A DNA stretch of 63,781 bases, the filler included, from Octopus bimaculoides (lineage: Eukaryota), in the NCBI RefSeq assembly GCF_001194135.2. It is 8 parts of 7 records of this genome, joined end to end, with 100 filler letters (N's around TTAATTAATTAA, not from the genome) between each part and the next. Parts side by side here need not be neighbours in the genome. Positions count along the whole stretch, not along the records: positions 11,958 to 27,942 come from NC_068982.1; 7 more parts are not named here. The stretch is one strand, 5' to 3'. The position numbers and the translations under genes were made by a program. Shown here in pieces: positions 12,330 to 27,012 of the stretch; the stretch's first letter is position 1; the number at the start of each line of letters is the position of its first letter. The notes below the pieces were generated by a model, which saw only the letters and a program-made list of their open reading frames with translations, was not told the origin of the DNA and ran no database searches.

Positions 12330-12806
12330 TCTGCAAAATCTTTGTAAGCCTAGCGCTTATTCTATCGTTTTCTTTTACTGAACTGCTAAGTTACAGGGAC
12401 ATAAACACACCAGCATCAGTTGTCAAGTGATGGCGAGAGGAAAAACACACACACATACACACACACACACACATATACATATATAAATATTTTAATCATT
12501 TGATAAAACTTTTTTAGTTGTTGGATATTTTATTTTATCTTAGTCTATTAGTTTTTTGGTAGTATGGGACACCTTGGAATTTTTATGAATTTTTAGTCGT
12601 TTATATTTACCTTTTTGATAGGTCGTTCTATTTGTATTTCATTCGCATAGATATTTTTACCTTCTGTATTTTTATGTATATTTTGTGTATATTTTTTATG
12701 TGTTTAAGAACCATGGTGATATTTATATATTACAAAATGTTTGAGGTATGGTGTTATATATAAAATCATTGACTTGCATTTAATGTTTGTTCTATAACCA
12801 GTGTTT

Positions 12807-12840
<34 letters not shown>

Positions 12841-12995
12841 CAGGCTTCTTTCAGTTTCCACCTACTAAATCCACTCACAAGGCTTTGGTCAGCCTGAGGT
12901 TATAGTAGAAGACACTTGCCCAAAGTGCCACGCAGTGGGACTGAACCCAGAACCATGTGGAAGCAAGCTTCTTACTACACAGCCACGCCTTCATC
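12330..12995 (-). mobile_element. Two SINE fragments (12330-12450 and 12835-12995)
   Basis: Reverse complement of the full SINE at 55485-55795 (gtggctgtgtggtaagtagcttgctt...ccacatggttccgggttcagtcccactgcgtggcac). Confidence 0.8.
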
Positions 12996-13530
12996 TATAT
13001 ATGACATTGATTTAACTGATTAGGCTCTCCCCTAAAAACTGCTGGCCTTATGCCTAAAATAGAAACAATTTTGTACGTTTAAAACTTATTTGGAGATGCA
13101 TATACAATAGGGTACCTCACATTTCATGATGCATATCAGCGAAATGATTTTGTACCACACACTTTCCAAAATAAATATCTAAAACCTTCAAAGCTGAGGT
13201 TGCCCAATATCCAGTTATTTCCAATGGCTACCTCACATGTATGTAACAAACAAACCCAGTGGTGTAACTAGAGAGTGTCCATCACCTGGAATAACCCTTG
13301 AATTTGCTGACCCTCCAACAGGCTTCCAGATCTATTCAGACTTATATCACTGACCTAAATGTGCTGTCCCCCTCATACAAACATCATCCTTGGTGAATTG
13401 CACACCTTTGTCCCTCCCCTGAAGCTATGCTATAACTCCCACCACTTATAATTTGTTGGAAGGGAGCATTGTAGATTACAACCATTTCATTCCTGGTTCT
13501 TATTTTATCAACCCCAGTGGAATTTGAGTA

Positions 13531-13770
13531 TATAGTGGCGCGAAATTATGGCCGCCATTAAGGAAGTACAATCTACGCATGCGCAAGGGACTTGCCTTCT
13601 CGGAAGCCCCTCAAGTACGCATGCATAGTAAAACCAGTACTTAAAGCGTTTCTTTCATTTTCTAAACCTCTTCAGCATGATGCCTTCGGCGTAACAGCTC
13701 CTTGCTCCTCTGGCATGCATCAACGAGGCTCTTAACCTTCCCATGCCGATTATAAGACAACCAGCGGCTG
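13531..13770. mobile_element. Possible solo-LTR-like dispersed repeat
   Basis: GC-richer island starting tatagtggcgcg with paired gcatgcg motifs. A similar-looking island lies at 521-790. No coding support. Confidence 0.3.
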
Positions 13771-14866
13771 CTAAGCTGAATGACACAGGATTTTTAAAAC
13801 CAAGCATCACCAAAAATAAAACTTATTTTTATTATGTTGTTAATTGTTCTACTGTTTCCTTAATATATAATTTTGCTGAAAGGTGATAGAGAGAGACTAA
13901 TGTCTCTATTGCAACTATCAACCTTTTACAAGTACAAGAATGTAAAGTGGTGTAACTTAATACCACAGAAGACATTCGCCTGACTCCTTAGAGACTGAGC
14001 CACTTTTTAACCCTTGCATATATTAGCATTCCTGAAACTGCATCCCAAAAACTATGTTCTATTATCAGTGTTAGAAAATACTTCAGTTCTGATCACTTGC
14101 TTGTAAAATACAAAGTTCATTTGAAGCTTATATCAGAATATTTATCAGATATGGACACAGGACATAAAACTCACTGTAGGCCATCAGATCTTTTGTATGG
14201 ACCACTGGTGAGTGGGTAGGGTCCACCTGGATCACAGTGAGTATTAATCACTTCTCTAAAGCATATTACAATTATCTGCTTGTATAGTTTGCTGTTTCTA
14301 ATTCACTATGTTTGCACATATGTTCATGTGTAGGGCACTGCCCAGGGACTGTAGATGAACTGTAGACAAGAACTTCACTGCAGGCTAGCTAGTGTACTGG
14401 TCAGCAGAAAAAAGTACTTCCTGATTGGCAGAAAACACGACAGGGTTTCCACCAATAGATTGAAACTGGCCCATCTCCATATTGACAGCCTCAGCAAAGG
14501 GCTCAAACACCAAACAAAGGCTGACCTAGGTAAATCACACCAGCCCCAGACTACAAACAGTCGCCAAACAGCCGAATAACCACACACACAGGCAGGGTGG
14601 TTAAAACACCCTCCCAGTTCCAATGACAGTCAACAGTTTTGGCAGGGAGCTATATGTAGGGCACTGCCCAAGGACAGTAGATGAACTGTAGACAGGAACT
14701 TCACCGTGGGCTAGCTAGTGTATTGGTCAGTAGAGAAAGGGGTTTCCAGTTAGGAACGGAAAGGAAATGGTGATGTTGGATGGTTGAAGGTATTTGCCCT
14801 CACAATATAAATACACCAACACACTCTTGTTAGTAGTCGTTTTTTATGTTTAGCATAACAAAGTTA

Positions 14867-15708
14867 TACATGTATGTATAAGTATCTGGACTGTTGCCAT
14901 AGTAATGAAGCTAAAGCACTCATTGACCTTGAACTCTACTGTGCACGTGCACTAACTTTTAACATTCTAGCTCACTTCTGCTGCTTACAGCAGTGCTTGG
15001 AAGGAACGTGTGTAGCATGTGATCGTCGCATTGACAATGACAGAGAAAGTTACCATGGTGGTCCCTGCTCAGAGACCTATGCAATGTTGCAGAAAGTATG
15101 GTGAGGAGTGTATGAGCCACATGCAAGTGTATGAGTGGTTCAGATGTTTCCAAGATGGCCGGAAACTGTTGATATTGATGAATGTTTTGGGAGACCCGCA
15201 ACCAGCAGAACAAAGAGAAACATCACAGATGGACATGCAGCTGTGAGGGGAAATCATTGAATCATCATCCATAAGTTATCAAAGGATGTGCAGGTTAGTT
15301 ATGGTTCAGTTCAGTCCATTATCACTGAAGATTTGGGTATGCGACACATATCTGTTAAGTTTATGCCAAAATTGCTTTCAGCTGACCAAAAAGACACTTG
15401 GGTTTCGGTTGCACAAGATCTTGATTGTGTTAAGAGCAATGATAACTTTTTGAAAACTTTGCATATGCCTCTGTGCAGGTATCGCCAAGCTTTTGGCAAA
15501 ATTTGATACAGATTCTCTGGTCAACTTTCTCTGTGATGGGCAATGTGCTAATCACATACTACACACCTTCCTTCCAAGCACTGCTGTAAACAGCAGAAGT
15601 GAGCTGGAATGTTAAAACAAGGTCAATCTGTGCCAAGCAGCTTCACTCTCTCTGCTTTAGCTTCGTTACTATGGCAACAGTCCGGATACTTATTGATCAG
15701 ACCACGTA
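14867..15708 (+). mobile_element. Internally deleted mariner (long-TIR non-autonomous element) retaining the HTH-coding region
   Basis: About 170-bp inverted arms (ataagtatctggactgttgccatagtaatgaagctaaagc / gctttagcttcgttactatggcaacagtccggatacttat), right end cacg|TA, and mariner N-terminus ETYAMLQKV...VYEWFRCFQDGR...EDLGMRHISVKFMPKLLSADQK. Confidence 0.88.
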
Positions 15709-16289
15709 TATGTTTGTGTGAGTGTAAGGACTTGAATATATACACATATGTATATGTGAGCCATGTGAAAAACACTGGTACTGCTGCCACATAAAAAGTG
15801 CTGGTGCTATGTAAAAAGCATCCAGTACACTCTGTAAAGTGATTGGCATGAGGAAGGTAATCCAACTGTAGAAACACACAAGTGTGTGTTTATAATGTAT
15901 TTGAACATGCATACATGTGCATACACACCACAAGTAACAAAATAAGTATAAAAAGCTAAGACATCAAGATAAGATAGTTCAAAGTGTCATCACAAGTACA
16001 TTATGTGACATAATTTAAGCTCTTTAATTATCTGATAACATATTTCAACAAACACAATGGAAGTGATAGGTAGTGGCTCTCGTGACTTCTGATCTGAACT
16101 GATTGGAAGTGCAAACATGTATATGTTTTGAAGTAGAATAATACTACTGTTAGTTAGACTTAGGAAGCTGCACTGCTTCCTGTCGGCCTTGACACATTTC
16201 CTGTGTCCTTATGTTTACAAAGGAGAGACAAGCACCTCCACCCAGTTAAGCCTGCATCATCATCATTGTTTAATGTCCACCTTCCAAGC

Positions 16290-16685
16290 TGACATGGTTA
16301 TATATATGAGCCTTATGGAGACAGTTCTTTTCAAGTGTTGGGCCTCTTGGAAGCAATGACCTAGACTTATGGCATTATGTGGTGCTTAAGAAGAAGACCG
16401 ATCAAGCCGATCAAATTGCAGTCATGGAAGAAACTGATGTCATGTAAATTGGCACCCATGCTGGTGGCACATAAAAGCCCCTTGGTGTCACACAAATGGC
16501 ACCAGTGCCGGTGGTATGTAAATGCACCCATTGCATGCTCAGTGTGGTTGGCATTAGGAAGGGCATCCAGCTGTAGAACACCATACCAAATCAGACTGGA
16601 GCCTGGTGCAGCCTTCCAGTATGCCAGCTCAGTCAAACTGTTCAACCCATGGACAGTGAACGTTAAATGATGATGATGATGATGA
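16290..16685 (+). mobile_element. RTE LINE 3' end with (ATG)n tail
   Basis: Ends ...DLWHYVVLKKKT, followed by the same 3' UTR as 21071-21497 and a (gat)n tail. Confidence 0.75.
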
Positions 16686-17639
16686 TATATATATATATAN
16701 NNNNNNNNNNNNNNNNNNNNNNNNNNNNNNNNNNNNNNNNNNNNNNNNNNNNNNNNNNNNNNNNNNNNNNNNNNNNNNNNNNNNNNNNNNNNNNNNNNNN
16801 NNNNNNNNNNNNNNNNNNNNNNNNNNNNNNNNNNNNNNNNNNNNNNNNNNNNNNNNNNNNNNNNNNNNNNNNNNNNNNNNNNNNNNNNNNNNNNNNNNNN
16901 NNNNNNNNNNNNNNNNNNNNNNNNNNNNNNNNNNNNNNNNNNNNNNNNNNNNNNNNNNNNNNNNNNNNNNNNNNNNNNNNNNNNNNNNNNNNNNNNNNNN
17001 NNNNNNNNNNNNNNNNNNNNNNNNNNNNNNNNNNNNNNNNNNNNNNNNNNNNNNNNNNNNNNNNNNNNNNNNNNNNNNNNNNNNNNNNNNNNNNNNNNNN
17101 NNNNNNNNNNNNNNNNNNNNNNNNNNNNNNNNNNNNNNNNNNNNNNNNNNNNNNNNNNNNNNNNNNNNNNNNNNNNNNNNNNNNNNNNNNNNNNNNNNNN
17201 NNNNNNNNNNNNNNNNNNNNNNNNNNNNNNNNNNNNNNNNNNNNNNNNNNNNNNNNNNNNNNNNNNNNNNNNNNNNNNNNNNNNNNNNNNNNNNNNNNNN
17301 NNNNNNNNNNNNNNNNNNNNNNNNNNNNNNNNNNNNNNNNNNNNNNNNNNNNNNNNNNNNNNNNNNNNNNNNNNNNNNNNNNNNNNNNNNNNNNNNNNNN
17401 NNNNNNNNNNNNNNNNNNNNNNNNNNNNNNNNNNNNNNNNNNNNNNNNTTGCTCGACTAAAGGCGGTGCTCCAGCATGGCCACAGTGAAAGTACAGAAAC
17501 AAATAAAAAGAAGGAAAGATGCAATATAGCATATAATACATTCAGAGAAGATAAATAAAAGACTGGGGGGTGGGGGGTGGGGGAATTAATAAAAATAAAA
17601 ATACATTTGAATGACACCACTAGATGGTTAGGTGAGTAG

Positions 17640-17790
17640 GCTAACTTTTCCCTCTGACTGACATGGGGACTGTAGCAATGTGAAATGAAGCGTTGTGCTC
17701 AAGAATACAATGCATTGCCCAGCCTGGGAATCAAACCTATGCTCTAGCAATTGTGAGTGCAACAGCTTAACCACTAGGTCACACATCTTC
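17640..17790 (-). mobile_element. tRNA-derived SINE head
   Basis: Minus strand gacctagtggttaag (A-box-like) ... ggtttgattccc (B-box-like) ... ttcttgagcacaacgcttcatttcac. Confidence 0.75.
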
Positions 17791-17844
17791 ACAAAAAAAA
17801 ACATAAAGATGGAACTAGATATAAGTAGATATTTAAATACATAC

Positions 17845-17930
17845 ACTATGCAAATTATTGTTCCTGTTGACAGGACAAAAGTGTTTTTTCTTGTCCAGTG
17901 ACAAAAGTGTTTACTCTGCAGTTGAAATTT
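17845..17930 (-). CDS. M6PR-like: Exon of an MRH-domain (CD-MPR/ATG27-like) receptor: end of MRH domain + start of TM helix
   Basis: Acceptor ctcttattttcag|; 86 nt KFQLQSKHFCHWTRKNTFVLSTGTIICI+GT; donor |gtatgt. Phase 0 entry matches the previous exon. LSTGTIICI resembles the LSVGSILLV TM start of CD-MPR. Confidence 0.8.
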
Positions 17931-18249
17931 CTGAAAATAAGAGTTAAAAAATTAGTGGGATTTATATAAAACAAAAGAAAAACTAATTATATAAAAATAA
18001 AAAGAACCAAAAAGAAAAATCTAAGGTAAGATAATTGGTGATTGTTATTATTTAAGACAGGGGTCGTAATTGCACTTGGGAGACAGGTAAATTTATACAA
18101 AATCATGAGTTAAAATAGTAAGATAAAATAGGTATAATGTTGGTTATGTGTTCATGAATTTAAATATTTACAAACACCAAAATTGTGTATTATATTCAGG
18201 CATGGTTTGTATTTTTCAATAAATATATTTTCTTTATTTATCTGTTCTT

Positions 18250-18800
18250 GTATAGAAATTGTTTCCTTGCATTAGTAGATGGTTGGAGATTCTCTGCACA
18301 TCTACCAAAGTGTTCATTCAACGGTGTCTGTCTATGCCTTGGGAAATGGATCTGTTGCTTATGCAGTGTAGCTCTCCATCTGTGATGTCCTTGTTTGGCC
18401 TATATAATTGTGTCCACAACATGGTTAAGTTATCATATAAATTAAATTTTCAGATGCACAAATGAAATTGGTCTTAAATGTGAATCTTTGTCCATGTTTG
18501 AAATGGAATTCTGAATATATATATATATATAAGGATTTATTTTTTGCAATGAGATAAAAAACCCAAAGCTATTTCCAGGATATTTATTATATCCCTTCAT
18601 TGGAGACAGTGTGAGAGGATGGTTGAGCAATAGTTAATTTAGATAAGATAGGAAATAGAGAGTGAATGTAGGGATATTGTATTTGTAAATCTATTGTTTA
18701 GGCAGAATGGTATACATATAAGATTCCAATACCTTGTGAGTAAAATCCAACAGTCTTTAAGATTGGTCATTGCATTTGTAAATCCATTATTAACCTCTGG
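18250..18800 (-). mobile_element. Highly degraded non-LTR RT remnant
   Basis: PLTLSPMKGYNKYPG resembles the GYKYLG motif; many stops. Confidence 0.3.
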
Positions 18801-18831
18801 GTCTAATTGACACCACTACCGCTCATAACCT

Positions 18832-18869
<38 letters not shown>

Positions 18870-18873
<4 letters not shown>

Positions 18874-20260
18874 TCATCATCATCATCATCATCATTGCTT
18901 AATGTCAGCTTTCCATTCTGGCATGGGTTGGATAGTTTGACTGAAGGCTGGTGAAACAGAAGGCTGCACCAAAATCCAATCTGATCTGGCAAAGTTTCTA
19001 CAACTGTATGCCCTTCTTAACGCCAACCACTCCAAGAGTGCAGTGGGTGATTTTACATGCCACTGGCATGAGGGCCAGTCAGGCGGTACTGGCATTCACC
19101 ACGCTCAAATGGTGCTTTTTATATTCCACCTGCACAGGAGCCACTCCAGCAGCACTGGCAATGACCACGCTTGAATGGTGTTTTTTATGTGCCACTAGCA
19201 CAGGAGCCAGTCAGGCGACGATGGCAGCAATCACGCTTGAATGGTGCTTTTTACGGACCACCAGTATGGGAGCCAGTCAGCGGCCCTGGCAATGATCATG
19301 TTCAAACGGTGCTTTTAACATTCTAGGGCCACAGATGCCAATCAGGCAGTACACGATAATGGTTTCAATTTCACATGCCTCAACAGGTCTTCGCAAGCAC
19401 ATTTTATTGCCGAATGATTGAAGGGGACTCTTAAATGGGTTGGTTATACAACACTGACATAGGCCACGGGTTATGGTCTCACTTGGCTTACCGGGTCTTC
19501 TCAAACACAGCATATCTCCAAAGGTCTCGGTCACTAGTCATTGCCTCGGTGAGGCCCAATGTTTGAAGGTCGTGCTTTACAACCTTATCCCAGGTTTTCC
19601 AGGCTTTACCTCTTCCACAGGTTCCCTCAACTGCTAGGGTGTGACACTTTTTCACGCAGCTGTCTTTATCCATTTGCAATACATGACCATACCAGCACAG
19701 TCGTCTCTTTTGCACACCACATCTGATGCTTCTTAGGTCCAACTTTTCTCTCAAGGCACTTACACTCTGTCCTGTAGGCACACTCACATTACACATCCAA
19801 CGGGGCATACTGGCTTCATTCCTTGTAAGCTTACAAACGTCTTCAGCAGTCACGGCCCATGTTTCACTGACATGTAGCATGGCTGTTTGCACACTTGCGT
19901 CATATAGTCTACCTTTGACTCTGAGCGAGAGGCCCTTTGTCACCAGCAGAGGTAGGAGTTCTCTGAACTTTGCCCAGGCTATTCTTATTCTAGCAGCTAC
20001 ACTCTCAGAGCATTCACCCCCACTACTGACTTGGTCACCTAGGTAACGGAAGCTATCAACTACTTATAGTTTTTCCCCTTGGAATGTGACAGAAGTTGTT
20101 CTCTGCACATTTTCAGTGTTTATTGCTCCTGAGCATTTGTCACACACAAAAACTATCTTCCAAGTTAGCCTTCCTTTGATAATGCTGCACCTCTTATGTG
20201 ACCATAGCTTACACTGGGTACAAACTGTTACTCAGAGTTTCATGTGATCATTTATCAGTC
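18870..20260 (-). mobile_element. RTE-clade LINE, 5'-truncated, with tandem-repeat 3' UTR and (ATG)n tail
   Basis: VDSFRYLGDQ, AWAKFRELLPLL, ORF 19488-19943 LYDASVQTAMLHVSETW...DRDLWRYAVFEKTR; (CAT)n at 18871-18895 on the plus strand. Confidence 0.92.
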
Positions 20261-20484
20261 AGTTATGATAAGGTTATCACAGCTGTCTGATGAATGGTCA
20301 CATGAAATTCTGAGTAACAGTTTGTGAAGGTTTTTTCAGTCTCTTAATGAAGTAGTATATTCCTCTATTTCTGGTATTTGTGTTCTATTTTGTTCACCTT
20401 GTTTTGCATGTATGTGGTTGCTTGTGTGTGTGTGTGTGTGTGTGCATTTAATCAAAAATGTTGGAGTGAACAAGAAGAGTATGG

Positions 20485-20563
20485 TTGGACATTTATTTGC
20501 AATCGCTAGAATTGTTTCTACACAATGTAGAAACAATTGTAGTGACTGCAAATAAATGTCCAA
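20485..20563. repeat. 38-bp-arm hairpin with 3-nt loop
   Basis: ttggacatttatttgcaatcgctagaattgtttctaca-caa-tgtagaaacaattgtagtgactgcaaataaatgtccaa; 3 mismatches. Confidence 0.9.
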
Positions 20564-21070
20564 TAATAAATGTACTCCTTCTTGTTGATTCCAATTTCTT
20601 TTAGTTATCTATTCACACACTACAGAAGCCCAAACTCAAAACTGTTAATATGTAGAATACTACTAGTGTACAGCATGATGAAATCTGAAGGTAAATGAGC
20701 TTTATACTGTACTCTGCTATGTTTGCAATGGAATATATCATAATTAGAGGTACGCCATTGCCTACTGGCAGCCCCCCCCCACACACACACAACTGACGTG
20801 CGGGCTGGGATGTTGGATCGCCTCTGCAACTCAGTGTCAGGGAGGGGGGAATCACAAGGAGGAGTCGATTGAGGTTGGTGCTCTCAGACGCTTAGCCTCT
20901 CCGGCGTGCAGGTTGCTTTCGAGGTAGACCCTACTCAAGCGCAGCAGGGAACCCCAATGTGGAAAATTGGCCACACATCAGGGCCCCTATATATGTGTGT
21001 GTGTGTGTGTGTGTGTNNNNNNNNNNNNNNNNNNNNNNNNNNNNNNNNNNNNNNNNNNNNNNNNNNNNNN

Positions 21071-21497
21071 NAACCATCCCATTTAAGAGTACTCTTCAAT
21101 CATTGGGCAATAAAATGCACTTGCAAAGACCCATTGAGGCAAGTGAATTCATTGTCATGGCCGACGACAGTACTGCCTGATTGGCGCCCATGCTGGTGGC
21201 ACATAAAAGGCACCATTTGAGCGTGGTCGATGCCAGTGCTGCCTGACTGGCTCCCATGCCAGTGGCACATAAAAAGCACCAATCTAGTGTGGCCGATGCC
21301 AGTACCGCCTCACTAGCCCTCATGCTGGTGGCACGTAAAAAGCACCCACCACACTCTTGGAGTGATTGATGTTAGGAAGGGCCGGATTGGAGCTTGGGGC
21401 AGCCTTCTGGCTTGCCAGCCCTCAGTCAAACCGTCCAACCCATCCCAGCATGGAAAATGGACGTTAAACAATGACGTCGACGACGATGCTGATGATG
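21071..21497 (+). mobile_element. RTE 3' UTR copy (same family as 18870-19400, opposite orientation)
   Basis: Collinear match to the reverse complement of 18890-19400, including the about 65-bp tandem units and the tail. Confidence 0.85.
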
Positions 21498-21609
21498 GTA
21501 TATATTAATGACATTTAGGAACATGGCATTTTGCCATGCAACCATAATATGCTATAATGCATACTAAGTGTTTTTATACTACTAAGTATAAAATTAATAA
21601 ACACATATA

Positions 21610-22880
21610 TGTGACACGGGATGAATTTGTGAGGACCAATCTCAGGATGTTGAGCCTCACAGAAGAAGTGACAATAGGCTGAGATGTCTGGCGATATGAG
21701 GTTCTTGAGAAGACCCACCCACGTCAGTGAAACTGAGTTCTAAAAGCGCTGTGTGTCTCACCCACATATGACAAGAAACCATCTCACACACTCTACCATA
21801 ACAAACCAAACTACATCTCACTTTGCTTCCTCACATTTCCACTTCATGCATTATGCTTACCTCCCACTCCCCAATCCTGTCCTCTTGGCCCTGTCTCACA
21901 GTGTCATTGCTATCCTCTAGCCCCTGACCTGAGTGTGCCATCCACATGTAACAAAAAAACTTTTCGCACACCCTACCTCAACAACCCCACCTGCATCTTC
22001 ATATCTCTTCTCTTCCTCACCTTTCCTCCTTCATACACTATGCCTACCTCTCACTCCCCAATCCTGTCCTCACAGCCATGTTTTTCTGAATCATTGCTAT
22101 CCGGTAGCCCCCTCACCCCCACTCTATATATCCAAGTTTTCACCACTCCCTTTCCTCACTCTCTAATCATGCTTCTTTGGCAATATCGTACCGCTTATAT
22201 TATGATCTTTGAACCTCAAGGTGATGCCCTGGTACTAGCCATCATCTATATCTCTCTCTGTCTTTACTCAACCATCCCATTTATATTCTGATCCCTGTCT
22301 CTTGGGAGTATTTCCAGCACTTTGCAATCCTGATATCTCCCACATTCTCCCTCCTTTTCCTGCACTTCCCTCAGGCTGGGTAACCATGAACCCCCTTTGT
22401 GGCAGCACACCTGCTTCTCCCTTCATTCTTTCTCTCTCTCTCTCTCTCTGACCAGGTAACCTTGTACCTCCTCTACAGCAAGATACCAGTGTTTTTCTCT
22501 GTCTCATTATAACCTTTCATTATCTAACACAGGATCACCTCCTCCAATGCCTCCCCCCCTCTCAAAAGAGTTTTGTCTTGCAGGATTCTTGGTGACCCTG
22601 TCAGTGCAGGTACCACTTAAAAAGCATCCAGTCCACACTATAAAGTGGTTGGCATTTGGAAGGACATCCAGCTATAAAAACCTTGCCAAAACTGACCTCA
22701 CCTATGCTTGTGCCATGTAAAAAGCCCTAATTCCACACTGCTGAGTGGTTGGTGTTAGGAAGGGCATCCAGCTATAAAAGTCTGGTGCAAGCTTCTGCCT
22801 GGTCAGTACCTGTCAAACTGACCTACCCATGCCAGTATGGAAAGTGGTCATTAAAAATGATGATGATGATGATGATGATA
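21610..22880 (+). mobile_element. RTE 3' end(s) with pyrimidine-rich duplicated UTR and (ATG)n tail
   Basis: Coding end ...WRYEVLEKTHPRQ*; about 186-bp-period duplication (21826-21927 / 22012-22114); UTR tail at 22590-22880. Confidence 0.7.
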
Positions 22881-22898
22881 TATACATACATACATACA

Positions 22899-22966
<68 letters not shown>

Positions 22967-24500
22967 AAGTATAAAGCTAATAAGCACACACACACACACA
23001 TATATATATTTGTTTGTTTGTGTGTGTGTATGTGCATCATCATCCTCATCATTTAGCACCTGTATTTGCGTGCTGACATCGATTGCATAGATTGAATGGT
23101 TTGACAGGAGCTGACAGATTAAATGATTAAATCTTGTACGTAAAGTGCAATTTTTATCTGTCAATCTGTCTGTTACCATCTTGCTGCCTACATAAGTGAA
23201 TCAATCTTGACAAAACTTTACATACAAGTTAAACTAACATCCAGTTCAATTACAGGCTAATTGGATTTCAATAAAAATCTATAATGGGCTCCCTAGTTGG
23301 GCTATTATTTGATAAAATGAGAAAGATGCAAAGAGTGTCAGTGTGAGGGAAATGTGGTGGCATAGTGAGTGTAGTTGATATCAGGGAAGGGGAAAACAGC
23401 ATTGTTTAAGTGACAAATATGGAGTGGCAGTGGGATGATAACTTTAATACAGCTGTCATTCATGGATATACACGTGACACTGCACACATACTTTCATAAA
23501 TACATAGATGCATGCATAGACACACACACACACACACGCAGATACACACACACTACATGCACACACATGCACTTACGCATAACTAACTTTTAAAATGCCA
23601 AAGAAGAGAAAGAAAGGTGGGTGTGAGGAATATGTAGCTTTAAGGAGAGATGGGGTAGGTGGCTATTCTGCTGTCCATTGCAAAAAAACACTCACACACA
23701 GATACACACACACAGATACACACACACACACATACATACATACATACATACATGCATACATATATACATACATCTACTATACACAATTTTAAACTCATTA
23801 CTTGTGTGTACGTTTGTTAATGTGTGCGTGCATGCATGCATGTGTGCGCGCGTGTGTGTGTGTGACGTCCTATAGATGTCTGTCTTTCTACTTTTGTAGG
23901 GTCTTCCCTGTGCTGTTACATATTGTGAAATTTTAAAATTATATCAAAATTTTTAAATTTGATATATTGAAATAATTTTCTACATTAAATCCAATTTCGT
24001 TATTTATTTGTTCCAGAAAAACAGCAGGAAAATATTATTGAGGTTTAAAGTTTAATCAACTTTACCTAATCAGAAAACAAGATTCGGAAGCTAGCATTAG
24101 CTGTCTATCACAAAATGAAAGCAAAATCATTATGAGGAGGAATTTTTATTAAACATACAAAAGCAAGACATCACGATGACCAAAGTTGTAAGAATTTCTG
24201 GAATTTTAATAAGTCGTAATGAATAAAGTCTTGTCAGATGGTAGAACAGACATGTAAATAATTTAAAAAGGAAAAAATCCTCAACAAAATTTTTTTGAGT
24301 AAAATTGCACAACCCTGGCCTGATCAAGAGGCTTATCTGTAGGGGAAGGCATGGTCTGAGATGGTATAAACAAAAATTTATGTAAGACATTCTATTGTAA
24401 AAATTGCCTGGCAATGACAGGCTCTTCAGCTAGTAAAAAATATAGAGAGAACAACAAAAATATGAAAGATTAGTCAATGAGAAAGAAACAAACTACTTAC

Positions 24501-24585
24501 ATAATTTCGATAATCTAACAAGGCATATTGTCCAGTAAAAAAAAAGGTTGCTTCCTCTTCTTTAGAGCAGACCAATGTTACTGCA
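24501..24585 (-). CDS. M6PR-like: Internal exon of the MRH-domain receptor gene
   Basis: Acceptor aatcag|; 85 nt = T + AVTLVCSKEEEATFFFTGQYALLDYRNY; donor |gtaagt. The first base completes codon AG|T from the upstream exon. Confidence 0.85.
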
Positions 24586-24917
24586 CTGATTTTGGGTACC
24601 ATACAAAATAAGATTGTAAATGTTCAGTTTTATTATTTGTAGTAATCCATGTTTGCTACTTCTTAATTACTATCTCATTTTCCTTATCCTAAGAATTAAA
24701 GTATTATGCTAAGTTTAATGAGCCAAAAGATTTTTTCATCTGCAATAAAAAATTTGAAGCTTTTTAGATTTTTGAAAATAAAGATTTCTTACTCATTTGA
24801 GCTACGGAACAATTTTCTTTGCTTACAATATATTTTTCATACTTGAATGGTTTTGATAATACGAAAATTTGACAGAGCAGGTATTTTACAGTTAGGTGAG
24901 AATTCACTATGGCTTAG

Positions 24918-25253
24918 TGAAAGATTAAACTTTATATAACTTAAATCATAATAAAACAATTAACTATATTGTATAATCAAAGAAATTAAATAAAAAGACT
25001 AGTTATTTATCCTATAAAATAAAAAGAAATATTAAACAGTATTAATGGAAAAAATTCAACCCTTATCTAATCGAAGTCTTAGTTTAGGCTAAGATGATAA
25101 ACTTACACCTAATTAATTCTTTTTATTTTATTCACTACTAATTAATTCTTTTTATTTTATGGGATAAATACCTAGTCTTTTTATTTAATTTCTTTGATCA
25201 TACAATATAGTTAATTGTTTTATGATTTAAGTTATATAAAGTTTAATCTTTCA
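24918..25253. mobile_element. AT-rich MITE-like element: about 108-bp near-perfect inverted arms, about 117-bp spacer
   Basis: Arms 24918-25028 and 25146-25253 differ by 3 substitutions and one 3-nt indel. Confidence 0.85.
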
Positions 25254-26439
25254 TTCATAATAAAATTTTCATTCATGTTTTTATATCTATTTATTCTATT
25301 CTTTTTCTTTACGCAATATTTTCACGAGACTTCTTTTGAATAAACGTTTTAGTCTAAAATCTTTTAGTTTAAACTATAGCATCGTTTAGATATGTGCTAC
25401 TTCTGTCTTTATTATTTTAACCTAAAACTTCGTTCAAATTGTATTTTAAACGAAAGATTCGTTAAAATTAGTTTTTGCATATAATATTCCTGTTAGTTTA
25501 TATTATAATAAACATAAAGTTAATTATGGAACGCTTATAATTTTGATATTTTTAATAATATTTTTCTAGCTTAATATAATAAGTATTTTATATACGTTCA
25601 TTTGTTATTTATTGTTGGTTGATATATACATTCTTTTATTATTATTATTGTTGAATTTGGACCTGAAGACTAGCTATATTTTTGAAAAGAATTGATTTTC
25701 GATAGTTTTAATCGATTTAAATATTCCTTCTATTTGAAAATTGGTTATGAAACACGTGTAGTCGTTTTATTATCATTATCTTATGATATTTACTTTGTAT
25801 TATATTATACTTATTTATTGTGCTTTTACTTATTAATTTTTCTATATGTGATAGTGGATTTTCATCAATGAGTTCATGAACCTTGGTTCTTTTCCCTAAA
25901 ACTATNNNNNNNNNNNNNNNNNNNNNNNNNNNNNNNNNNNNNNNNNNNNNNNNNNNNNNNNNNNNNNNNNNNNNNNNNNNNNNNNNNNNNNNNNNNNNNN
26001 NNNNNNNNNNNNNNNNNNNNNNNNNNNNNNNNNNNNNNNNNNNNNNNNNNNNNNNNNNNNNNNNNNNNNNNNNNNNNNNNNNNNNNNNNNNNNNNNNNNN
26101 NNNNNNNNNNNNNNNNNNNNNNNNNNNNNNNNNNNNNNNNNNNNNNNNNNNNNNNNNNNNNNNNNNNNNNNNNNNNNNNNNNNNNNNNNNNNNNNNNNNN
26201 NNNNNNNNNNNNNNNNNNNNNNNNNNNNNNNNNNNNNNNNNNNNNNNNNNNNNNNNNNNNNNNNNNNNNNNNNNNNNNNNNNNNNNNNNNNNNNNNNNNN
26301 NNNNNNNNNNNNNNNNNNNNNNNNNNNNNNNNNNNNNNNNNNNNNNNNNNNNNNNNNNNNNNNNNNNNNNNNNNNNNNNNNNNNNNNNNNNNNNNNNNNN
26401 NNNNNNNNNNNNNNNNNNNNNNNNNNNNNNNNNNATATA

Positions 26440-26475
<36 letters not shown>

Positions 26476-26479
26476 CACT

Positions 26480-26660
26480 CATATATATGTATGTGTGTGT
26501 GTGTACTTTTGTGTCTCTTTTTATGTCCCTGTAACTTAGCGGTTCGGCATAACAGATCAATAGAATAAATACCAAGCTTAAAAAAACTAGTGGTGGGGTC
26601 GATTCGTTTGACTAAAATTCTTCAAGGCCACAGTATAATGACTGAAGCACATCAGGAATT
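26480..26660 (+). mobile_element. SINE 3' fragment
   Basis: ctgtaacttagcggttcggca...tagaataaataccaagctt matches the SINE tail at 55720-55795. Confidence 0.75.
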
Positions 26661-26881
26661 AATATTCAAGTGAAAGAGGAATTTAATCATTACAATGACA
26701 GCCAATGTGCTGTATCACTTTGTAAGGTATTTGCATTAATCTACCTGACTAATAATTTACAGCTGACCAAAATTCATCCAAAAAACTAGATACCCAAAAG
26801 CAAGAAAACATATAAGCAAGACAAAAATAATAATAATGAAATAAATGCAGCAAAGAAAACCATTACAATTTTTAATCATAC

Positions 26882-27012
26882 CTTTGAGTTTTTCCTGATG
26901 GATCGCTGTATGTCAAAATTACATTTCCTTCATCAACTGTAAAGTCAGCAGACTTTATACTTCCTAAGTTACGTGGATTTTGTACAGGAGATATGACATT
27001 GAATTGGCAGAT
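26882..27012 (-). CDS. M6PR-like: Internal exon of the MRH-domain receptor gene
   Basis: Acceptor tctctttatttcatacag|; 131 nt ICQFNVISPVQNPRNLGSIKSADFTVDEGNVILTYSDPSGKTQ+AG; donor |gtatga. The xCQ...LG...G.(V/L).L.Y pattern is that of MRH domains. Confidence 0.85.

What the first reader, a model, noticed from the sequence alone, without database searches (positions are those of the whole stretch)
17845..27012. Hidden MRH-domain receptor gene (CD-MPR/ATG27-like) invisible in the ORF track
Three small exons with canonical splice sites and matching phases (2 then 0) join into ICQFNVISPVQNPRNLGSIKSADFTVDEGNVILTYSDPSGKTQ-S-AVTLVCSKEEEATFFFTGQYALLDYRNY-KFQLQSKHFCHWTRKNTFVLSTGTIICI-V. This follows the MRH pattern (xCQ...G...G.L.L.Y...I...C...FTG(E)...Y.F......C), then a TM start after a very short stalk. 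MRH followed directly by TM fits either a single-domain CD-MPR/ATG27-type protein or the last repeat of a CI-MPR.
Basis: partly seen in the sequence, partly recalled or inferred. Interest (0 to 1): 0.75.

Follow-up and report, generated by a model that had tools for sequence, protein, structure and literature searches.

The report
Octopus CD-MPR-like lectin receptor gene
The three small exons are real, spliced and expressed, and form the middle of a duplicated, fast-evolving octopus gene for a one-domain membrane receptor of the mannose-6-phosphate-receptor fold; the gene is already in the public annotation, but only as truncated models because assembly gaps hide its ends.

Summary
Confirmed. 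The three minus-strand exons (27012-26882, 24585-24501, 17930-17845) have AG/GT sites.

The window is Octopus bimaculoides chromosome CM046602.1. NCBI already models these exons as "uncharacterized protein LOC106871643", so the gene is not unknown.

The joined peptide has no Pfam hit. A control shows this is a truncation effect. Its relatives are 239-aa single-domain type I proteins: a same-species paralogue (LOC106874633), an O. vulgaris orthologue and an Argonaut protein. All pass Pfam Man-6-P_recep and ATG27. AlphaFold models of the paralogue and of the window product match CD-MPR crystal structures best.

The exons are numbers 3-5 of a 7-exon gene. Exon 2 lies beyond a gap and exon 1 was not found. 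Exons 6-7 (rest of the TM helix, cytosolic tail) are probably in the gap at 16700-17448, because RNA splices from 17845 into an exon-6-like sequence that is not in the assembly.

Only two of the four canonical M6P-binding residues (Gln, Tyr) are kept; Arg and Glu are lost. The luminal exons diverge about twice as fast as the introns (dN/dS 1.2-1.6). The CI-MPR last-repeat alternative is rejected.

The parts
26882..27012 (-). It is 3 nt shorter than in the paralogue and orthologue (134 nt).
   Evidence: Splice sites. RNA contigs X1, X2 and X3 cover it with 0 mismatches. X3 joins it upstream to exon 2: the loose end equals L001 9998-10027. It aligns to exon 3 of L002 and L003.
24586..26881 (-). 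Intron 3, containing the assembly gap 25906-26434. Its true length is unknown: the same intron is 9.1 kb in O. vulgaris and 5.5 kb in the paralogue.
   Evidence: X1 joint 24585/26882 'skips 2296, CT..AC'. No exon lies here in L002 or L003.
24501..24585 (-). Coding exon 4 of 7 (exon B), 85 nt: (S)AVTLVCSKEEEATFFFTGQYALLDYRNY.
   Evidence: It has the same length as exon 4 in L002 and L003.
17931..24500 (-). Intron 4, containing the assembly gap 21017-21071 and repeat-derived ORFs.
   Evidence: The B/C junction is shown by loose ends at 17930 that equal the last 30 nt of exon B in X1, X2 and X3, and by a continuous X1 contig.
17845..17930 (-). Coding exon 5 of 7 (exon C), 86 nt: KFQLQSKHFCHWTRKNTFVLSTGTIICI(V). 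It holds the last luminal Cys, a short stalk and the start of the TM helix. It is 15 nt longer than in the paralogue (71 nt).
   Evidence: The donor at 17845 is used in X2 and X3, which continue into GCTTTTGTGTGTGCT (V-LLCVL). That sequence equals the start of exon 6 of the paralogue (L003 32499 onward) and is absent from the window and from L001.
17457..17844 (-). Start of intron 5, retained in the main X1 transcript. Reading through adds 71 codons, with the stop at 17628-17630. This gives Gnomon isoform X1 (181 aa).
   Evidence: Nt 220-693 of the X1 693-nt contig lie on 17930-17457 without a break. P0002 equals exons plus ORF 17628-17846.
16700..17448 (.). Assembly gap (N; length only estimated) that most likely hides exons 6 and 7, i.e. 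the rest of the TM helix and the cytosolic tail. It corresponds to about 3.8 kb in the paralogue and about 11.7 kb in O. vulgaris.
   Evidence: The left flank aligns to L003 up to 30819 and L002 up to 40178. The right flank aligns to L003 from 34665 and L002 from 51907. Exons 6 and 7 of both relatives lie in between. tblastn finds no exon 6 or 7 anywhere in the 105-kb locus L001. RNA shows that an exon 6 exists.
12959..16573 (-). Transcribed region downstream of the gap, probably the long 3' UTR. It is homologous to the sequence downstream of the stop codon in the paralogue and orthologue, with blocks 91-96% identical to O. vulgaris.
   Evidence: X1 contigs at depth 38-74 cover 12959-16573, while introns 3 and 4 have depth 0 in the same run. 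Collinear matches are L001 23966-24790 with L003 34665-35528, and L001 24534-27481 with L002 51907-54372. A>G changes in the minus-strand sense support transcription from this strand.

Best explanation
The three exons are coding exons 3, 4 and 5 of a seven-exon Octopus bimaculoides gene, LOC106871643 on chromosome CM046602.1.

Predicted protein (inferred from its relatives). A type I membrane protein of about 240 aa: a signal peptide, one luminal MRH (P-type lectin) domain held by four disulfides, a very short stalk, one TM helix, and a cytosolic tail of about 50 aa that ends in a YxxPhi motif. This is the CD-MPR/ATG27 family architecture.

Why the public models are wrong. The models (118 and 181 aa) start at an internal ATG in exon 2. 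They end either in a retained intron or in an exon 73 kb away. The likely cause is that exon 1 and exons 6-7 fall in assembly gaps.

Origin. The gene is one of two copies from a duplication that arose after the split from the O. vulgaris lineage. The other copy is the full-length LOC106874633 on CM046608.1.

Likely function (inferred). It is a cargo or glycan receptor that cycles between Golgi, endosomes and lysosomes through adaptor binding to its tail. It probably does not bind mannose-6-phosphate in the canonical way, because the essential Arg and Glu are replaced. Its ligand-binding domain is changing at or above the neutral rate.

Shown: the exons, the junctions, expression, family and fold, the duplication, the residue pattern and the rate pattern. 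Inferred: the hidden exons, trafficking and ligand.
For: Exons and junctions.

Identity with the NCBI models and the O. bimaculoides chromosome.

Family and fold:
- phmmer gives E 1.7e-12 to P0003.
- Pfam PF02157 and PF09451 hit P0003, P0007, P0009 and P0013.
- The family profile hits CI-MPR MRH domains in the PDB at E 1.7e-17.
- hhalign gives probability 96%, E 3.5e-9, against a non-cephalopod profile.
- AF2 plus Foldseek put CD-MPR on top for both the paralogue (2rlb_A, E 1.2e-7, TM 0.66) and the window product (3k41_A, E 3.9e-4).

Gene structure:
- The relatives have seven exons of 155/79/134/85/71/127/69 nt. The window locus is collinear with both.
- Exon 2 (L001 9949-10027) is open and spliced to exon A in X3. 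A further 182 nt of transcript lies upstream of it, which is the size of exon 1 plus a short 5' UTR.
- The X2 contig ends exactly 10 nt into exon 6. Its last 31-mer therefore still contains the window-specific A at position -21 (the paralogue has G). This means the exon 5/exon 6 junction belongs to this copy.

Signs that the gene is intact: 126 codons are open despite 47 substitutions relative to the paralogue, both indels are in frame (-3, +15), and all five Cys encoded by exons 2-5 are conserved.

Duplication: intron divergence is 5.7% to the paralogue and 8.8% to O. vulgaris. Only one cluster was found for O. vulgaris and O. sinensis.
Against: - The window peptide itself gives no Pfam hit. 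The control explains this only indirectly.
- Exons 1, 6 and 7 of this copy were never seen as DNA. Only 10-15 nt of exon 6 and the length of the 5' transcript are known.
- In run X1 the dominant form retains intron 5 and would give a tail-less protein.
- dN/dS of 1.5-1.6 is also what a decaying copy could show.
- Expression was seen in only 3 of the 14 organism-A RNA runs examined.
- The binding-residue mapping rests on a sequence alignment through loops.
Confidence: 0.85

Rival explanations
1. The window copy is a truncated or decaying duplicate (a transcribed pseudogene) of the intact paralogue LOC106874633. On this reading its exons are kept only because the duplication is recent, and no working receptor is made.
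For: - The public models are truncated.
- Exons 1, 6 and 7 are absent from the 105-kb locus.
- dN/dS against the paralogue is 1.53, and the exons diverge faster than the introns.
- The main X1 transcript retains intron 5, and a minor form splices into a sequence not found in the window, L001 or L003.
- Expression is patchy.
Against: - There is no stop or frameshift in 126 codons with 47 substitutions and two indels. My rough estimate is a chance of about 0.02 under neutrality.
- All splice sites and all five Cys are kept.
- In X2 and X3 the transcript is spliced correctly into an exon 6 and extends 182 nt upstream of exon 2.
- The missing exons coincide exactly with assembly gaps.
- The same high luminal dN/dS (1.17) is seen between the two full-length genes P0013 and P0009, whose TM and tail are constrained (0.56). 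A fast rate is therefore a property of the family, not a sign of decay in this copy.
Confidence: 0.12
2. The exons are the last MRH repeat of a large multi-repeat receptor of the CI-MPR (IGF2R/Lerp) type.
For: The MRH domain is followed directly by a TM segment, and the 'xCQ' motif is typical of CI-MPR repeats. The family profile's only PDB sequence hits are CI-MPR domains.
Against: - The orthologue and paralogue are 239-aa proteins. Their exon 1 encodes a signal peptide immediately before this single domain.
- The X3 transcript has only about 182 nt upstream of exon 2.
- The structure search ranks the single-domain CD-MPR first.
- The tail is homologous to the CD-MPR/ATG27 Pfam models.
Confidence: 0.01
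3. The two O. bimaculoides copies are not a true duplication. They could be two deeply diverged haplotypes of one locus that the assembly placed on different chromosomes.
For: - The assembly is gap-rich.
- The two loci are collinear over at least 18 kb at 87-93% identity.
- O. vulgaris and O. sinensis show only one gene.
Against: - Intron divergence of 5.7% and protein divergence of 29% are very high for alleles.
- The copies sit on different Hi-C-scaffolded chromosomes.
- The RNA contigs in X1-X3 match the window copy with 0 mismatches.
- Whether single individuals carry both copies at full dosage was not tested here.
Confidence: 0.05

Closest known systems
[quoted passage not shown]
   Same: - Single luminal MRH beta-sandwich, short stalk, one TM helix and a short cytosolic tail.
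- It is the best structural match for both AF2 models.
- Relatives pass the Pfam cut-off.
- Gln and Tyr of the binding tetrad are kept.
- The tail has a Trp at the position of the CD-MPR Phe-Trp signal and a nearby Cys (family alignment, for the paralogue).
   Different: - The essential Arg (R111 equivalent) is Thr, and the Glu (E133 equivalent) has no acidic counterpart.
- The Cys that normally precedes the conserved Tyr is missing. There are eight luminal Cys instead of six.
- The paralogue's tail ends in KEYNEI (YxxPhi), not in the acidic-cluster dileucine motif.
- Sequence identity to solved CD-MPR is only 14-16%.
- The luminal domain evolves at dN/dS of 1 or more.
ATG27 (Pfam PF09451), yeast MRH-like type I membrane protein of the Golgi/endosome/vacuole cycle
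   Same: - Relatives hit PF09451 over the luminal, TM and tail regions: P0007 66.5 bits, P0013 28.8 bits.
- There is a C-terminal tyrosine-based motif. From my own knowledge, ATG27 is sorted by a C-terminal YSAV.
- There is no canonical M6P tetrad.
   Different: - The scores for the octopus proteins are only just at the cut-off of 27.
- No role in autophagy is known for the animal members.
- No ATG27 structure appeared among the fold-search hits for comparison.
Non-M6P-binding MRH domains (most CI-MPR repeats, Drosophila LERP, OS-9, XTP3-B, GNPTG)
   Same: The MRH fold is kept while part of the Gln/Arg/Glu/Tyr tetrad is lost. CI-MPR domains are the only PDB sequence hits of the family profile, and OS-9 and Yos9 appear in the fold search.
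   Different: Those proteins are either multi-repeat receptors or soluble ER-lumen proteins. This one is a single-domain membrane protein with a CD-MPR-type tail.
NCBI gene models LOC106871643 (this gene), LOC106874633 (paralogue) and LOC115215234 (O. sinensis; same cluster as O. vulgaris CAI9727388.1)
   Different: Both LOC106871643 isoforms are truncated or aberrant, with no signal peptide, no complete TM helix and no tail. They are named 'uncharacterized', and no paper mentions them.

Membership tests
MRH / P-type lectin domain fold | Flattened beta-sandwich of the MRH type, recognisable by structure comparison | tested here: met
   AF2 of the window product P0001 gave mean pLDDT 72 (core blocks 81-92). 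Its top 38 Foldseek PDB hits are all MRH proteins, with CD-MPR 3k41_A first at E 3.9e-4. For the paralogue P0013 (pLDDT 80), 2rlb_A is first at E 1.2e-7 and TM 0.66.
MRH / P-type lectin domain fold | Significant sequence or profile similarity to MRH families | tested here: met
   The direct Pfam scan of the window peptide is negative. However, phmmer gives E 1.7e-12 to a PF02157 protein, hhalign gives 96% / E 3.5e-9 against a non-cephalopod profile, and the family profile hits CI-MPR domains at E 1.7e-17. The control shows that relatives trimmed to the same exons also fail Pfam.
MRH / P-type lectin domain fold | Conserved disulfide-forming cysteines | tested here: met
   The five Cys encoded by exons 2-5 (LPC, HC, ICQ, LVC, HFC) align with invariant or nearly invariant Cys columns of the family. 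The three Cys of exon 1 could not be seen for this copy.
CD-MPR (functional mannose-6-phosphate receptor) | Gln, Arg, Glu and Tyr tetrad essential for M6P binding (Q66, R111, E133, Y143 in CD-MPR; PMC11422237) | tested here: not met
   An hmmalign alignment with CI-MPR domain 9 gives: Gln present (ICQ), Tyr present (NYKF), Arg position Thr (GKT|QSAVTLVC), and no acidic residue at the Glu position. The distant relative P0007 keeps all four. The mapping through loops is by sequence only.
CD-MPR (functional mannose-6-phosphate receptor) | Type I topology: signal peptide, single MRH domain, one TM helix, short cytosolic tail | tested here: inconclusive
   For this copy only the MRH part, the TM start (exon 5) and the first 5 codons of exon 6 (from RNA) are seen. 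Exon 1 and the tail lie in gaps. The full topology is present in the paralogue and orthologue.
CD-MPR (functional mannose-6-phosphate receptor) | C-terminal acidic-cluster dileucine sorting signal and Phe-Trp signal in the tail | tested here: not met
   This was tested on the paralogue and orthologue only. Their tails end in ...KRKEYNEI / ...KKKEYNEI (YxxPhi) with no dileucine, and have Ser-Trp where CD-MPR has Phe-Trp. The tail of the window copy is not in the assembly.
CD-MPR (functional mannose-6-phosphate receptor) | Binds M6P-bearing lysosomal enzymes, enhanced by divalent cations | not testable with these tools
   This needs a binding assay.
ATG27 family (PF09451) | Pfam PF09451 match above the cut-off | tested here: inconclusive
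   Paralogue 28.8 bits, P0003 27.0 bits (cut-off 27), P0007 66.5 bits. The window fragment alone gives no hit. An illustrative chimera of window exons 2-5 plus paralogue exons 6-7 scores 37.2 bits over residues 41-179.
CI-MPR / IGF2R (last repeat) | Many tandem MRH repeats upstream of the TM-proximal one | tested here: not met
   The orthologue and paralogue have a signal-peptide exon directly upstream and are 239 aa in total. The X3 transcript extends only about 182 nt beyond exon 2.

The most novel reading that the evidence does not exclude
Octopuses may carry a CD-MPR-derived single-MRH receptor that has given up canonical mannose-6-phosphate binding (Arg and Glu lost). On this reading its luminal domain is under diversifying selection: non-synonymous divergence is 2-3 times the intron divergence and dN/dS is 1.2-1.6, while the TM and tail are constrained. 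O. bimaculoides has recently duplicated it. That would make it an MRH scaffold re-purposed for a fast-changing ligand, such as a pathogen or symbiont glycan or a rapidly evolving endogenous cargo, rather than a housekeeping lysosomal sorting receptor.
Probability: 0.2. Interest if true: 0.55.

Novelty: new member of a known kind. Interest (0 to 1): 0.33.

Why it matters
For annotation. LOC106871643 can be renamed from 'uncharacterized' to a CD-MPR/ATG27-family MRH receptor. Its two public protein models are artefacts of assembly gaps: an internal start codon, and either a retained intron or a terminal exon 73 kb away.

For biology. Lysosomal sorting receptors are normally slow-evolving housekeeping genes. 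This family combines three unusual features: a lineage-specific duplicate, loss of two of the four M6P-contact residues, and luminal exons that diverge twice as fast as their own introns while the TM and tail stay constrained. That pattern is an inexpensive, testable lead on how the MRH fold acquires new specificities outside vertebrates. It is not a new kind of system.

Tried and rejected
- Direct Pfam scans of the 100-aa, 118-aa and 196-aa versions of the peptide gave only noise: aRib, DUF4367 and IstB, all with E > 0.04. I do not take this as evidence against MRH, because P0013 and P0009 trimmed to the same exons also give nothing.
- The word-index homologue search with the peptide found only the gene's own NCBI models.
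- tblastn of the Argonauta, O. vulgaris and paralogue proteins against the 105-kb locus found exons 2-5 only. There is no exon 1, 6 or 7, and the 14-mer from the RNA loose end is absent from the window and L001.
- The three 2026 raw-read RNA runs (about 6% sampled) and runs X4, X5, X6, X7, X9, X11, X13 and X24 showed essentially no coverage of the exons. I therefore could not read more than 15 nt of exon 6.
- The PDB sequence search did not reach CD-MPR itself even at E 10; only the fold search did.
- Literature searches for the locus and protein accessions found nothing. General searches on invertebrate CD-MPR gave nothing specific.
- I rejected the CI-MPR last-repeat reading. I considered a pseudogene and mis-assembled haplotypes and rated both unlikely (see rival explanations).
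- The ORF at 19488-19943 in intron 4 gave no Pfam hit.

Full report
**1.

On the minus strand, 27012-26882, 24585-24501 and 17930-17845 are each flanked by a polypyrimidine tract plus AG upstream and by GTATGA, GTAAGT or GTATGT downstream.

RNA supports the junctions:
- Run X1 has a 693-nt contig (depth 50) that runs exon A, exon B, exon C. The A/B joint is reported as 'skips 2296, CT..AC'.
- X2 (depth 35) and X3 (depth 17) show the same junctions, through loose ends identical to the neighbouring exon.

The two N runs inside the finding (25906-26434 and 21017-21071) lie in introns 3 and 4. RNA joins the exons straight across them, and the gap-free O. vulgaris locus has no exon there. They affect only the intron lengths.

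**2. The gene is not unknown**

The piece is 100% identical to Octopus bimaculoides GCA_001194135.2, chromosome CM046602.1. The peptide is 100% identical over its full length to NCBI's 'uncharacterized protein LOC106871643' isoforms X2 (118 aa) and X1 (181 aa). No paper mentions these accessions.

**3. Family**

Pfam finds nothing in the peptide. An exhaustive phmmer search, however, finds an Argonauta hians protein, P0003 (238 aa, E 1.7e-12), and P0007 (261 aa). Both pass PF02157 Man-6-P_recep; for PF09451 ATG27 (cut-off 27 bits) P0007 passes clearly and P0003 scores exactly 27.0.

Further searches found two closer relatives:
- a second O. bimaculoides gene, P0013 (LOC106874633, 239 aa, chromosome CM046608.1).

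They also found about 70 insect proteins, all carrying both Pfam domains.

Tests on the window peptide itself:
- With exon 2 added, it is 71% identical to P0013 and 60% to P0009 over exons 2-5 (BLASTP 52% over 151 aligned positions, E 3e-45).
- It aligns to a profile with no cephalopod sequences at probability 96%, E 3.5e-9.
- Control: P0013 and P0009 cut down to the same exons also give no Pfam hit, so the negative Pfam result reflects truncation.

Profile and structure tests:
- The family profile hits CI-MPR MRH domains in the PDB (6z32, E 1.7e-17).
- The AF2 model of P0013 (pLDDT 80) matches bovine CD-MPR best (2rlb_A, E 1.2e-7, TM 0.66). All 39 top hits are MRH proteins.
- The model of the window product P0001 (pLDDT 72, core 81-92) also matches CD-MPR best (3k41_A, E 3.9e-4). 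Its 38 top hits are all MRH.

**4. Gene structure and what the gaps hide**

P0013 and P0009 are each encoded by seven exons of 155/79/134/85/71/127/69 nt. The window locus (L001) is collinear at nucleotide level with both: 85-88% identity to O. vulgaris and 87-93% to the paralogue.

Relative to the relatives they carry a 3-nt deletion in exon 3 and a 15-nt insertion in exon 5, both in frame.

Upstream end:
- Exon 2 (79 nt, open, (V)FQNVTNSSIYKWLPCGQMHCNNVNQT) lies at L001 9949-10027. That is beyond the 2.1-kb gap that ends the window piece.
- X3 RNA joins exon 2 to exon A and extends a further 182 nt upstream, the size expected for exon 1 plus a short 5' UTR.
- The Gnomon models simply start at the ATG inside exon 2.

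Downstream end:
- The left flank of the gap at 16700-17448 aligns to intron 5 of the relatives. The right flank aligns to sequence downstream of their stop codons. Exons 6-7 fall in between, in about 3.8 kb in the paralogue and about 11.7 kb in O. vulgaris.
- No exon 6 or 7 exists anywhere in the 105-kb locus.
- Even so, X2 and X3 contigs cross the 17845 donor into GCTTTTGTGTGTGCT (V-LLCVL). This is the start of exon 6 as in the paralogue, and differs from O. vulgaris exon 6 at 2 of 15 positions.
- The X2 contig stops exactly 10 nt into exon 6. This is where a 31-mer last contains the window-specific A (G in the paralogue) 21 nt before the exon end. The junction therefore belongs to this copy.

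Other 3' forms:
- In X1 the main form retains intron 5, which gives isoform X1 (stop at 17628-17630).
- A minor X1 form (depth 2.9) splices from 17845 into a sequence not found in the window, L001 or L003.
- Gnomon isoform X2 ends in a 9-codon exon 73 kb away. I regard that as an artefact of the gap.

**5. Function**

By homology the full protein is a signal peptide, one MRH domain with eight luminal Cys, a short stalk, a TM helix, and a tail of about 50 aa ending in YNEI.

I mapped the four residues needed for M6P binding in CD-MPR (Q66, R111, E133, Y143; PMC11422237) through an hmmalign alignment with CI-MPR domain 9:

| Residue | Window gene |
|---|---|
| Gln | kept (ICQ) |
| Tyr | kept (NYKF) |
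| Arg position | Thr |
| Glu position | no acidic residue |

The O. vulgaris and Argonauta proteins even lack the Gln. The distant relative P0007 keeps all four.

The most likely mechanism is a tail-sorted Golgi/endosome/lysosome cargo or glycan receptor that does not bind M6P canonically. This is an inference and was not tested.

**6. Evolution**

| Comparison | Exons 2-5 divergence | Flanking intron divergence | Fisher p | dN/dS |
|---|---|---|---|---|
| Window vs paralogue | 12.9% | 5.7% | 1.4e-6 | 1.53 |
| Window vs O. vulgaris | 17.6% | 8.8% | 3e-7 | 1.6 |

- Against the paralogue, non-synonymous sites alone differ from intron at p = 1.5e-9.
- Between the two full-length genes P0013 and P0009, omega is 1.17 for the luminal part and 0.56 for TM plus tail.
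- Fast luminal evolution is therefore a property of the family and does not mark this copy as a pseudogene.
- The open frame, the in-frame indels, and the conserved Cys and splice sites argue for a maintained gene.
- Caveats: synonymous divergence (0.12-0.18) is also above the intron divergence, dN/dS is not significantly above 1 on its own, and BLAST-alignable intron sequence may understate the neutral rate.
- The two O. bimaculoides copies are closer to each other than either is to O. vulgaris. Only one gene was found in O. vulgaris and O. sinensis. This indicates a duplication after the split from the O. vulgaris lineage.

**7. Verdict**

It is a new, mis-modelled member of a known family. 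The modest added interest lies in the duplication, the lost M6P-binding residues and the rapid luminal evolution.

Noticed in passing
window 14878-15051 and 15523-15693 (editing sites 14892-15031): In run X1, a 1423-nt RNA contig (depth 52) shows 14 T>C changes on the plus strand (A>G in the minus-strand transcript) at full depth, clustered within 140 nt. They lie on one arm of an inverted repeat: a 95-nt arm at 88% complementarity and a 41-nt arm at 95%. The repeat is built from remnants of a Mos1/mariner-like element (HTH_48 hit at 15019-15246). This looks like ADAR hyper-editing of a double-stranded stretch in the gene's 3' UTR.
   Followed up: partly
window 17457-17844: Intron 5 is retained in the dominant X1 transcript. 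The read-through ORF (stop at 17628-17630) gives NCBI isoform X1 a C-terminus encoded by intron sequence that looks to me like a tRNA-derived SINE (gtgacctagtggttaagctgttgcactcacaat...); the SINE identity is my reading of the sequence and was not tested. A minor X1 form (depth 2.9) splices from 17845 into a sequence not found in the window, L001 or L003.
   Followed up: partly
L001 95692-95715 (outside the window, 73 kb downstream of exon 5): The last exon of NCBI isoform X2 (RNTYQMGM*) lies 73 kb beyond the 17845 donor. It has no counterpart in the paralogue or orthologue. It is probably a rare or spurious splice, picked up because the real exons 6-7 are missing from the assembly.
   Followed up: partly
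window 13183-13530, 13932-14225, 15874-16130: These blocks downstream of the gene are 91-96% identical to O. vulgaris, clearly above the 85-88% seen in introns, and they are transcribed in X1. They may be conserved 3' UTR or regulatory sequence.
   Followed up: no
window 26435-26505, 12358-12557, 12758-12957, 16358-16699, 17449-17557: The sequences next to the assembly gaps and some other spots are simple TA/CA-type or dispersed repeats. They collect RNA word depths of 10^4 to 10^5 and hundreds of spurious 'joints'. Depth there says nothing about this gene.
   Followed up: no
protein P0012 (O. sinensis LOC115215234 isoform X2, 195 aa): The O. sinensis orthologue has an annotated isoform that reads exon 6 in another frame (…IICIVLLCACIISRPRSCYQYICTT*), presumably through an alternative acceptor, and would lack the cytosolic tail. 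Tail-less variants may therefore recur in this gene family.
   Followed up: no
proteins P0007 and P0014 (Logan assemblies, organism unknown) and P0008 (466 aa): P0007 keeps all four canonical M6P-binding residues and scores about 67 bits on both PF02157 and PF09451, unlike the octopus proteins. P0008 has three tandem copies of a similar Cys-patterned domain but no Pfam hit at all.
   Followed up: no
L001 8489-8677 (minus strand, upstream of exon 2, outside the window): This ORF has a mariner-transposase-like C-terminal sequence (…SPDIAPFDYHLFCSLQNHL…) and lies in intron 1. It was read by eye only and not scanned.
   Followed up: no
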